Position numbers and translations under genes: made by a program
Notes under the pieces: generated by a model
What the model was told of the DNA's origin: nothing
The model's input: the letters and a program-made list of their open reading frames with translations, nothing else
Databases searched by the model: none
Shown here: positions 18,301 to 21,300 of the stretch, one piece after another
How the letters are laid out: each line of letters starts with the position of its first letter
Numbering within the stretch: the first letter of the stretch is position 1
Assembly (NCBI GenBank): GCA_950097015.1
Contig: CATNEN010000008.1
Location: 558,001 to 622,000, forward strand
Length of the DNA stretch: 64,000 nt
Origin: Macrostomum hystrix
Taxonomy: Eukaryota > Animalia > Platyhelminthes
Reading direction: 5' to 3'

Positions 18301-21300
18301 TCTAATGACAAAATACAGCGTGTCGTTTTATAAGTCATTCTTAAGCAATGGAAATGCTGTGCAATAACTTATTAGAAACTTGTATGTTTAATTAGTTATA
18401 AGTCTGTGAAACATAAGATATACTCCTTTACATTTAAGTCAGACTATTTATCGACAATAAATCACGTGCGATTAAACTAAAGTTACTTAAAATTCATTGG
18501 ATTGTCGAGTTTTACATAAAAGGTTAAACTTTAATCATTGCATGTGTTAAAAAATAAAAATAGGAACTTACACTTTACCATTGTTTCAGCTGGCTCTGCC
18601 AGAAAATGTAAGATCAACATTTCTGATGTCATCGTTCACAGCTTCAGGCCTCGAGATCAAACTGAAATAATTTTTCATCTCAATATATATATATATCGTT
18701 TTCCTTAAGATTAACAGTATAAATTGTAAGCGAGTCACGAAAATTACAAAATAGTAGAAGATTCGTCACGCAAAAGGTCATGCAGTCTTTTGTTTTCATT
18801 TTGTTTGTATGCTGCTTTGCCACACTCGAACTGTACTCGTTTCTACTTGAGACAGGGGATTGTAAACTTCGGTAATTTACTTTTAAATTTTGAATTTCAC
18901 ATATTAAGGTTTTTATTTTTAAATAGAAGGTAATTCAAGCAGGTAGAGATCATTGGAACTTTTCACATCACACAGCTAGTCAGTTCATGACATTCCAGGA
19001 CTTTAAGATTTTCGAAGTATCACCAAATACTCTTTCGTTTCGATAGGACTACAGCTTGGCTTTCGAAAATTTGCTTTCCAAAAGAAGCATATGCTTTCAA
19101 TAACTTTAGCTTGCCAGAAAGCATACATGTATCAATTACTAACAGCACGAGGAGGAAAAATACAGAGGGCGAACTCTCAAAGTTTTTTAAACTTTCTCGT
19201 TAAGCAGAGCAATCATAATTAAACGATCAAGCAATCTTTGATCGTTATTTTGCTGACAATGTCAAAATCATACGAATGTTTTTCTGGCTCATTGTCTCGT
19301 CGACTTGCTTATGTAAATATATTTACCATCATTTCACATAGTCGCTCAAATGAGACAAAGTGGAATCACACCATTACAATATATGAATATATTTGTTCTG
19401 TTTGCTAAAGGCATTTTTATCCAGTTTTCATTGCTTGATCATTCAGTTGTTGCTGAATTAAATTGAAAGGTAAAGACTGCATATGTACAAAGTGACCATT
19501 GTTGCCTACCTTTCCAATGAAATTGCAGGCCGGCAAGGCCACCATTTCTATCAATTTCTTCCGACTATTCCGTGCGATGCGACTCGTGAAGCTGCTAAAT
19601 CGGGGCGAGCACCTGCGAACTCTGCTCTGGACATTCATTAAGTCGTTCCAGGTAAGCCTTGACTTCTGATCGAGTAACCTTCGAAAAATGTGTTTCTAAG
19701 TGAAAAAAATTCATGAAGAGATCTAAAGGACAAAATGCAGGCATAATTACAAACGATTCTCTCCAGGCCTTGCCGTATGTCGCGCTGCTCATCCTGATGC
19801 TGTTCTTCATCTACGCTGTCATCGGCATGCAGATGTTCGGCAAAATCAGATTAGACGCTCGTACACAGATCAACCGGAACAACAACTTCCGGACCTTCTT
19901 TTCAGCCTCTCTGGTGCTATTCCGCTCGGCTACAGGCGAGGCCTGGCAGGAGATTCTGCTGGACTGCATCAGCGGTAAAGCACCTGGATCACCTGGATTG
20001 TTAGGGCGATAAACGTAGAAAGTCAATAGCTTGACTTGAAAATCAATCACTTCCTTCTCCCCGTGTTGGTGGGCCTTCACATCCTATGATACAATGATGT
20101 CAGATATTGTAGTGTTAAAAGGAATTACGAGTAGGAGCTGAGGCACTTTAGTTATCATGAGCGTTTCAGATTAAAAAAATAGAATACCAATTAGGTAAGC
20201 GCCACTTCACTTGTTGAACTTTGGTGAAAAGAAAAGCATGTTTGCTTGATGTTCTAACACTTCTGTTAGTTTCTTTCTACGAGTCACGACCAATTTCTGG
20301 CTAAGGAATTTTTCTCTGCGCTTGTTTGCAAACTTTGAATCGCAACCAAACACATTGTGAAATACTATTGTTGTAGACCCGTCTGTTCTGTGTGACAAAC
20401 AGAGCGACAGCTACAGGGCATTTGAAGAGTCCCTGGTGCAGCACGTCGAGCAGAGCCTAAACGGCACCATTCCGCACGGGAACGTGTTTTATCTGAATCA
20501 TTCCGTGCTGCAGGAAGGCACCTGCGGCAGTCCTATTGCCTATCCATACTTTATCAGCTTTTACATGGTGTGCTCATTCCTGGTGAGTCGTATTCCAACC
20601 AAGCAGTTACTAATTCGCAATGCACCCCCTCCCCTTTTCCTCTTTTACCTTGCTTGGCAATCGAACACCCGTTGTGGTCGATGCGCACGCTGACAGTCAA
20701 GAAGGGCTGTGATCACGGCAGCGACACCTACCAGTTCTGGAACGACACGGGGCATAAGAATGGCAGCGAGCCGGGCTGCGGAACCCCGCTCGGCTATCCC
20801 TATTTTATCACTTTCTACGTTATCTGCTCGTTCTTGGTGAGACGGCCCAGCCCAAAAAGACCCTAACGACCCAAGCCTGCATCCGCTATCACAAAATTTT
20901 CTAGCGTCTGAAGCTCTAGGTGCGGTAATTTGACTTTGCCATGTGTCGCCCAATCGCGTTTGTCGCCATCAGTTGCCGCAGTAATACTAACCGTAAATAA
21001 AAGCCTCTTTAAATAGGCAAGCCCCACCACCAAAGTCTCGCGCCAAAATACCGAAAATCGGCCCCACCTCACTCCCTTCCCCACCACCCACAGCCTGTCC
21101 TTCAACTGCACAAATCGGCCCACCTCACCCCTTCCCCACCACCCACAGCCTGTCCTTCAACTGCACAAATCGGCCCCACCTCACCCCCTTCCCCACCACC
21201 CACAGCCTGTCCTTCAACTGCACGAATCGGCCCACCCCACTCCCTTCCCCACCACCCACAGCCTGTCCTTCAACTGCACGAATCGGCCCACCCCACTCCC

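What the first reader, a model, noticed from the sequence alone, without database searches (positions are those of the whole stretch)
20377..20836. Mutually exclusive exon pair swaps the domain IV outer-pore turret and half of IVS6 in an L-type calcium channel
Seen: between the domain IV filter exon (ends G|gt at 19974, phase 1) and the IINLFVAV exon (21812, phase 0) lie two paralogous exons. Both are phase 1-0 with intact splice sites and open frames. A is 206 nt: DPSVLCDKQ...[22 protein letters not shown] is 140 nt: VKKGCDHG...[21 protein letters not shown]. Joining both frameshifts, and skipping both deletes S6, so exactly one must be used. Both keep the two turret cysteines and each has two N-glycosylation sequons (NGT, NHS vs NDT, NGS). 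A is 22 residues longer and more acidic. Established: vertebrate CACNA1C mutually exclusive exons cover IS6 (8/8a), IIIS2 (21/22) and IVS3 (31/32), not this segment; in invertebrate Cav3 (exon 12a/12b) swapping an extracellular turret changes Na+/Ca2+ permeability. Inference: this is a pore-remodelling splice switch in Cav1 that I do not recognise from described Cav1 genes, potentially tuning permeation, toxin binding and drug binding by tissue.
Basis: partly seen in the sequence, partly recalled or inferred. Interest (0 to 1): 0.9.

Follow-up and report, generated by a model that had tools for sequence, protein, structure and literature searches.

The report
Alternative pore exons in flatworm Cav1
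A flatworm L-type calcium-channel gene carries two old, selectively preserved copies of the exon that builds the outer loop and upper half of the last pore helix, so it can probably make two pore versions; use of both in RNA could not be checked here.

Summary
Exon A (20377-20582, 206 nt) and exon B (20697-20836, 140 nt) are paralogous, open, AG/GT-flanked, phase 1-0 exons. They lie between the domain IV P-loop exon and the IINLFVAV exon of a Cav1 gene. Using one keeps the frame. Using both, or neither, gives a stop.

The new evidence is comparative. The genome holds four old Cav1 paralogs (C8 = window, C2, C33, C39). All four keep the same A-then-B pair with intact frames and splice sites. 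Flanking introns are randomised between paralogs (z about 0), while both exons stay similar (z 9-14). Every A copy has FYM at the dihydropyridine-site Met (rat Cav1.2 M1464). Every B copy has V, T or I there.

Another species (Logan contig L015) has the same pair. A third (ENA contig L017) has an analogous pair that also includes the filter.

No paper I could search describes a Cav1 exon pair at this site. The scan earlier noted a Cav2 pore-exon pair in this genome and a second pair in this gene.

Verdict: probable mutually exclusive pore exons, a new variant of a known kind. The proposed functional effects are inferred only.

The parts
19767..19974 (+). Constitutive exon: domain IV S5 end, P-loop and filter (..[16 protein letters not shown]), ending in phase 1 (G|gtaaag)
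19975..20376 (+). Intron 1 (402 nt). It shows no similarity to the same intron of the paralogs.
   Evidence: z 0.5, -1.5, -0.1
20012..20023 (+). 12-nt stretch perfectly complementary to 20810-20821 inside exon B. A weak lead for RNA pairing.
   Evidence: 4 of 200 shuffles reach 12 nt. Duplex energies are not significant.
20377..20582 (+). Exon A (206 nt, phase 1-0): long acidic turret with two Cys and two sequons, plus the IVS6 N-half ..[16 protein letters not shown] (Met at the M1464-equivalent position)
20583..20696 (+). A-B intron (114 nt): donor GTGAGT, TACTAAT branch-point-like motif at 20608-20614, pyrimidine run 20625-20646, acceptor ctgacag
   Evidence: Similarity to the paralogs' A-B introns is above shuffles (z 3.3-5.8).
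20697..20836 (+). Exon B (140 nt, phase 1-0): short turret with two Cys and two sequons, plus the IVS6 N-half ..[16 protein letters not shown] (Val at the M1464-equivalent position)
20837..21811 (+). Intron 3 (975 nt), containing a 56-nt x 5.7 tandem repeat at 21055-21372
21812..21942 (+). Constitutive exon: IVS6 C-half and start of the EF-hand region ([43 protein letters not shown]). Its protein sequence is identical in all four paralogs.

Best explanation
Exons A and B are a tandem-duplicated, mutually exclusive exon pair in a flatworm Cav1 (L-type) alpha-1 gene. Each mature mRNA takes one of them. Each supplies the extracellular loop after the domain IV filter helix (two Cys, glycosylated) and the first 15 or so residues of IVS6.

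The A form gives a loop 22 residues longer and more acidic, with a probably helical insert. It has a vertebrate-like I/Y/M set at the three IVS6 dihydropyridine-site positions. The B form gives a short loop and replaces the Met with Val.

Exclusivity is enforced at least by the reading frame. Both exons are 2 mod 3, so including both, or neither, gives a premature stop and probably nonsense-mediated decay.

Shown: the geometry, the Cav1 identity, the recurrence of the pair, and purifying selection on both exons.
Inferred: mutually exclusive use in RNA, tissue-specific use, and any effect on gating, permeation or pharmacology.
For: - Geometry and frames.
- Cav1 identity; II-NLFVAV versus ML-NLFVAV in Cav2; IQ and pre-IQ exons downstream.
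- Recurrence: four paralog loci (C8, C2, C33, C39) each hold A then B between the same constitutive exons. All 8 exons have an AG acceptor, a GT donor and a length of 2 mod 3 (A: 206, 218, 203, 140; B: 140, 143, 137, 137).
- Age of the paralogs: synonymous sites are saturated. Domain II identity is 82-93%.
- Selection: intron 1 and intron 3 are unalignable between paralogs (z -1.5 to 0.5), while exon A scores z 12-14 and exon B z 9-14.
- Type-specific characters in all four paralogs and in L015: A has FYM, CGS and donor GTGAGT; B has FY[V/T/I] and donor GT[A/G]AG[A/G].
- Other species: L015 (Logan DRR639055) has the same phase 1-0 pair, 58 nt apart. L017 (ENA ERZ24900295) has a tandem pair of a longer exon that also includes TGE[S/A]W, 59 nt apart, both 1 mod 3.
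- Pharmacology site: I1460, Y1463 and M1464 are listed as IVS6 dihydropyridine determinants (PMC2362100).
- Precedent: CACNA1C exons 8/8a (IS6) change dihydropyridine sensitivity (PMC5748662).
Against:
- No spliced A- or B-containing protein fragment of a close relative was found.
- The 45-column tree cannot show that the A copies and the B copies form two clades (AU p about 0.22 each). A single origin therefore rests on synteny and discrete characters.
- Two other animals with the same or a similar gene structure have a single exon (L019, L025).
- The structure model of exon A is poor (pLDDT 50).
Confidence: 0.7

Rival explanations
1. Only one of the two exons is ever spliced in. The other is a silent relic of an exon duplication.
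For: No RNA evidence for either exon. The acceptor of exon B has a weak pyrimidine context right at the site. The B copies are more divergent than the A copies (43-60% against 51-68% identity).
Against: A relic would decay like the flanking introns, which are randomised between paralogs. Both exons keep z 9-14 similarity, open frames, both Cys, the YPYF.SFY..CSFL core and their splice sites in four paralogs and in another species.
Confidence: 0.08
2. Both exons are functional, but the paralogs have divided the work. Each gene mostly uses one exon, and the other is kept only in some paralogs, so this window's gene may make one form only.
For: Four paralogs give room for subfunctionalisation. 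C39 exon A has lost the long insert.
Against: All eight exons remain intact although synonymous sites are saturated. An exon unused in a given paralog should have decayed there.
Confidence: 0.12
3. The pair is not strictly exclusive. In some genes the short A-B intron is retained and read through, giving one very long loop.
For: In C2, C33, C39 and L015 the A-B intron is 1 mod 3 and stop-free in frame, so A-intron-B is one open frame. My rough estimate of the chance of this is about 1e-3.
Against: This is not true in the window: the intron is 114 nt and has an in-frame stop before exon B. The product would carry a second half-S6 outside the membrane, which is hard to reconcile with the channel fold. 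Pyrimidine-rich introns have few stops anyway.
Confidence: 0.05

Closest known systems
CACNA1C (Cav1.2) mutually exclusive exons 8/8a
   Same: A tandem-duplicated exon pair in a Cav1 gene that swaps an S6 pore-lining helix. The isoforms differ in dihydropyridine sensitivity and tissue use (PMC5748662; PMC3060452, listed).
   Different: It is in domain I (IS6), not domain IV. The two exons have equal length and no extracellular loop is swapped. It is vertebrate, and its regulation by PTB is known. Here both regulation and expression are unknown.
Invertebrate Cav3 exons 12a/12b (domain II S5-P turret)
   Same: Alternative exons that exchange a cysteine-containing extracellular pore loop of different length. 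The Cav3 swap changes Na/Ca permeability (PMC4436565).
   Different: A different channel family (T-type), a different domain (II) and the other side of the P-loop (before the filter). No S6 residues are swapped.
Invertebrate NALCN alternative filter exons (EEEE versus EKEE or EEKE)
   Same: Mutually exclusive pore exons in a 4x6TM channel of invertebrates, including flatworms (PMC3557258, listed; PMC4436565).
   Different: There the selectivity-filter residue itself changes. Here the filter Glu lies in the constitutive upstream exon. In contig L017 the filter exon is the duplicated one, but both copies keep the Glu.
Cav2 pore-exon pair in this same genome (scan note s1-273994)
   Same: Same genome, and also a duplicated pore exon in a Cav channel. 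That follow-up reported both exons used in RNA, one at a time.
   Different: A different gene family member (Cav2). That note proposes U2/U12 incompatibility. Here all four splice sites are ordinary GT-AG U2 type. I did not test that note.
alpha-tropomyosin exons 2/3 (steric exclusion by a distant branch point)
   Same: In the A-B intron the pyrimidine run starts 38-47 nt after the donor of exon A in all four paralogs and in L015. Its distance to the acceptor of exon B varies from 9 to 50 nt. The window has TACTAAT with its branch A at +31. This layout resembles the tropomyosin design (my own knowledge).
   Different: It is untested. Introns of about 80-115 nt are spliced normally in these genes, and flatworms are known (my own knowledge) to splice very short introns, so steric blocking may not apply.

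Membership tests
Cav1 (L-type) alpha-1 subunit | Domain IV P-loop with the filter Glu (TGEAW) and best similarity to Cav1 rather than to Cav2, Cav3 or Nav | tested here: met
   Cav1.1/1.2/1.3 at E 2e-40 to 5e-39, Cav2 at 2e-33 to 7e-30, Cav3 at 1e-13
Cav1 (L-type) alpha-1 subunit | IVS6 C-half reads IINLFVAV, where Cav2 has MLNLFVAV, and EF-hand, pre-IQ and IQ exons lie downstream | tested here: met
   (IINLFVAV..., [67 protein letters not shown]). Searches show the II versus ML split among the library proteins.
Cav1 (L-type) alpha-1 subunit | Four-domain gene with EEEE filters in domains I-III | tested here: inconclusive
   Domains II-IV and the C-terminus are seen in the window. Domain I lies upstream and I did not reconstruct it.
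Mutually exclusive tandem-duplicated exons | Adjacent homologous exons with the same phases and intact splice sites | tested here: met
   (46% amino-acid identity, both phase 1-0, AG/GT)
Mutually exclusive tandem-duplicated exons | Including both or neither destroys the frame | tested here: met
   (206 and 140 nt are both 2 mod 3; stops appear in the A+B and skipped versions)
Mutually exclusive tandem-duplicated exons | Both copies kept by purifying selection | tested here: met
   four paralogs; exons z 9-14 against flanking introns z about 0; another species
Mutually exclusive tandem-duplicated exons | Transcripts contain exactly one of the two | not testable with these tools
No spliced fragments were found.

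The most novel reading that the evidence does not exclude
The domain IV outer loop plus upper IVS6 is a recurrent splice-switch site in Cav1 channels that the literature has missed. It is old in macrostomid flatworms, where it predates a four-fold gene expansion. It arose again, with different exon borders that take in the filter helix, in at least one other animal (L017). The A/B choice toggles the dihydropyridine-site Met and a helical acidic cap over the pore. This would give each of four genes two pore types (eight channels), possibly with exclusion helped by a branch point placed next to the donor of exon A.
Probability: 0.3. Interest if true: 0.7.

Novelty: new variant of a known kind. 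Interest (0 to 1): 0.55.

Why it matters
Mutually exclusive exons are a main way in which calcium and sodium channels are tuned. In Cav1 they are known for IS6, IIIS2 and IVS3, but not for the domain IV pore loop or IVS6.

IVS6 carries part of the dihydropyridine and phenylalkylamine sites. Flatworm Cav1 channels are of interest as anthelmintic targets and respond poorly to these drugs (PMC6796685).

A natural A/B pair that differs at the M1464-equivalent position and in a 22-residue loop insert is a ready-made experiment on what this part of the pore does. It also means that flatworm Cav1 gene models holding one exon miss half of the isoforms.

Tried and rejected
There is therefore no read evidence.
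- Exon A alone against the 5.8-billion protein set found no candidate at 37-119 aa.
- The representatives search with the domain II exon found no self or near relative. The best match was 76% to Heterobilharzia, and that locus was too long to fetch.
- The tree of 24 loop/S6 segments has too few columns. Neither an A clade, a B clade nor a C8 A+B pair is rejected.
- dN/dS could not be computed for most pairs because dS is saturated. I replaced it with the exon-against-intron test.
- Docking/selector RNA pairing: one 12-nt perfect match, but duplex energies are not better than shuffles in any paralog. I do not claim it.
- U12-type exclusion, as noted for the Cav2 gene, is rejected here because all sites are GT-AG with U2-type donors.
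- Structure of exon A from a 5-row alignment: pLDDT 50, with helices at residues 10-26 and 55-65 only as a hint.
- The accession numbers of the other contigs are in no searchable paper, so the species of L015, L016, L017 and L019 are unknown.

Full report
**1. Observation**

- The domain IV P-loop exon (19767-19974) ends in phase 1.
- Exon A (20377-20582, 206 nt) and exon B (20697-20836, 140 nt) both start with an AG acceptor in phase 1 and end ...CSFL|GTGAG in phase 0.
- The next exon (21812-21942) starts IINLFVAV.
- Either exon alone gives an open frame. Both together, or neither, gives a stop.
- The two Cys, the sequons (NGT and NHS in A; NDT and NGS in B), the 22-codon length difference and the greater acidity of A are all correct.
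- One small correction: the downstream exon ends at 21942.

**2. What gene this is**

The upstream exon matches Cav1.1, Cav1.2 and Cav1.3 best, at E about 1e-40, ahead of Cav2, Cav3 and Nav. Downstream exons encode the Cav1 EF-hand, pre-IQ and IQ regions. IINLFVAV is the Cav1 form; Cav2 library proteins have MLNLFVAV.

The gene runs on the + strand from about 7000 (domain II) to about 42000. The S6 parts of A and B align to rabbit Cav1.1 1348-1371...[20 protein letters not shown].

By the table in PMC2362100, the swapped segment holds the equivalents of rat Cav1.2 I1460, Y1463 and M1464. I1470, I1471 and N1472 lie in the constitutive next exon. Exon A reads I, Y, M at the three swapped positions and exon B reads I, Y, V.

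**3. The organism**

Other agents' notes call the genome a Macrostomum flatworm. I did not check this directly. It fits my best outside match for the domain II exon, a schistosome protein at 76%. The genome is 220 Mb in 42 contigs.

**4. The key new result: four paralogs keep the pair**

A six-frame search of the genome with exon A found four loci, each with two hits about 70-115 nt apart. After fetching them, all four (C8 = window, C2, C33, C39) turn out to be Cav1 genes with the same local structure:
- a P-loop exon ending ...C(I/V)(S/Q/N)G| in phase 1;
- an A-type exon;
- a short intron (114, 73, 97 and 91 nt);
- a B-type exon;
- an IINLFVAV...SAK exon whose protein sequence is identical in all four.

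All eight variable exons have an AG acceptor, a GT donor and a length of 2 mod 3 (A: 206, 218, 203, 140; B: 140, 143, 137, 137).

The paralogs are old. Synonymous sites are saturated, and the very conserved domain II exon is 82-93% identical.

A direct test of constraint comes from global alignment scores against shuffles:

| Region | z score between paralogs |
|---|---|
| Intron 1 | 0.5, -1.5, -0.1 |
| First 300 nt of intron 3 | -1.0, -0.1, 0.4 |
| Exon A | 12-14 |
| Exon B | 9-14 |

Neutral sequence has therefore been randomised, and both exons have been kept. A silent relic copy is very unlikely.

**5. A and B are two types**

In all four paralogs, A has ...CGS.IAYP(Y/F)FISFYM(V/L)CSFL and donor GTGAGT. 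B has FY(V/T/I)(I/F)CSFL and donor GT(A/G)AG(A/G).

Three of the four A exons carry a 20-30 residue insert after CDK.S..Y. A poor model (pLDDT 50) draws this insert as a helix.

A tree of the 45 alignable columns cannot resolve an A clade or a B clade (AU p 0.22 for each). It supports only C8_A+C2_A and C33_B+C39_B. A single duplication before the gene expansion is therefore the parsimonious reading from order, borders and type characters. It is not a tree result.

**6. Other species**

Searches with the open A-intron-B frames of the paralogs gave genomic ORF fragments from unnamed organisms.
- L015 (Logan DRR639055) has the same design. Its A' exon (137 nt...FYMICSFL|gtgagt) and B' exon (119 nt...FYIICSFM|gtgaga) are 58 nt apart and both phase 1-0.
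- L017 (ENA ERZ24900295, GC 31%) has a tandem pair of a longer exon that starts before the filter: (R)AATGESWQEIMLAC...FYVLCSFL and (R)[14 protein letters not shown]...FYVLCSFL. They are 59 nt apart and both are 1 mod 3. The different upstream border suggests an independent duplication of the same pore region.
- L019 has the same intron position and L025 has a filter-containing exon. Each has a single copy, so the pair is not universal.
- L016 and P0004 show A-like exons with loops of 100-200 residues.

**7. How exclusion may work**

The frame rule is shown. A transcript containing both A and B stops near the end of exon B, so it would probably be removed by nonsense-mediated decay (inference).

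All sites are U2-type GT-AG, so the U2/U12 idea noted for the Cav2 gene of this genome does not apply here.

The A-B introns keep some similarity between paralogs (z 3.3-5.8). Their pyrimidine run starts 38-47 nt after the donor of exon A in all paralogs and in L015, while its distance to the acceptor of exon B varies from 9 to 50 nt. The window has TACTAAT with its branch A at +31 (20608-20614). This resembles the tropomyosin 2/3 steric design, but it is untested, and flatworms splice short introns.

A 12-nt perfect complement between 20012-20023 and exon B (20810-20821) is a weak lead only.

**8. What is missing**

I sent none of those letters to search tools afterwards. No spliced protein fragments of near relatives were found.

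**9. Novelty**

Reviews list CACNA1C mutually exclusive exons at 1b/1c, 8/8a (IS6), 21/22 (IIIS2) and 31/32 (IVS3-S4). The review of pore splicing in 4x6TM channels covers NALCN filters and Cav3 turrets, not Cav1. Full-text searches for such a pair in IVS5-S6 or IVS6 of a calcium channel found nothing. Insect Cav1 isoforms in the library differ at IIIS5, not here.

So this is a new site for a known mechanism. It is well supported by comparative data, untested in RNA, and its functional consequences are inferred.

**10. Verdict**

- The best explanation is a mutually exclusive exon pair that gives two domain IV pore versions, with confidence about 0.7.
- Interest is 0.55.

Noticed in passing
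window 10547-10672 and 12195-12353: Two paralogous open exons for the IIIS2-S3 region (..[25 protein letters not shown].. and ..[25 protein letters not shown]..) in the same gene. It may correspond to the vertebrate 21/22 region.
   Followed up: partly
G000 C2:1121555-1124770 (-), C33:3399360-3402560 (+), C39:2352861-2355935 (+); loci L002, L003, L004: Three further Cav1 paralogs, each with the same A/B exon pair. C39 exon A has lost the long insert (140 nt).
   Followed up: yes
A-B introns of C2, C33, C39 (L002, L003, L013) and L015:950-1007: The intron lengths 73, 97, 91 and 58 nt are all 1 mod 3 and stop-free in the frame of exon A, so A-intron-B is one open frame in four of five cases. By my rough estimate the chance of this is about 1e-3. 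It is unexplained, and it is not so in the window.
   Followed up: partly
L017:10001-10468 (ENA ERZ24900295 ctg5808l): Another animal's Cav1 gene has a tandem pair of the exon that includes the domain IV filter helix (TGESW and TGEAW), the loop and the IVS6 N-half. The copies are 59 nt apart and both are 1 mod 3. This is probably an independent mutually exclusive pair.
   Followed up: partly
L016:15-677 (Logan SRR26958231) and P0004 / L014:5409-12038 (Logan SRR10674617): A-like exons (DPSVRCDRYSDSE...FYMVCSFL) or proteins with domain IV loops of 100-200 residues. P0004 is an intronless 2209-aa Cav1 on a gene-dense contig.
   Followed up: no
window 22800-24740, 26800-27830, 21948-22167: Long intronic tandem repeats (periods 20 and 14 nt, among others) fill several introns of the gene and give long spurious ORFs on both strands.
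   Followed up: no
P0001 vs P0152 (Rhagoletis pomonella Cav1 isoforms X1 and X2): The two annotated insect isoforms of equal length differ only in a 21-residue stretch at IIIS4-S5/IIIS5 ([22 protein letters not shown] versus [22 protein letters not shown]). So the insect Cav1 alternative exon seen here lies in a different place from the flatworm pair.
   Followed up: partly
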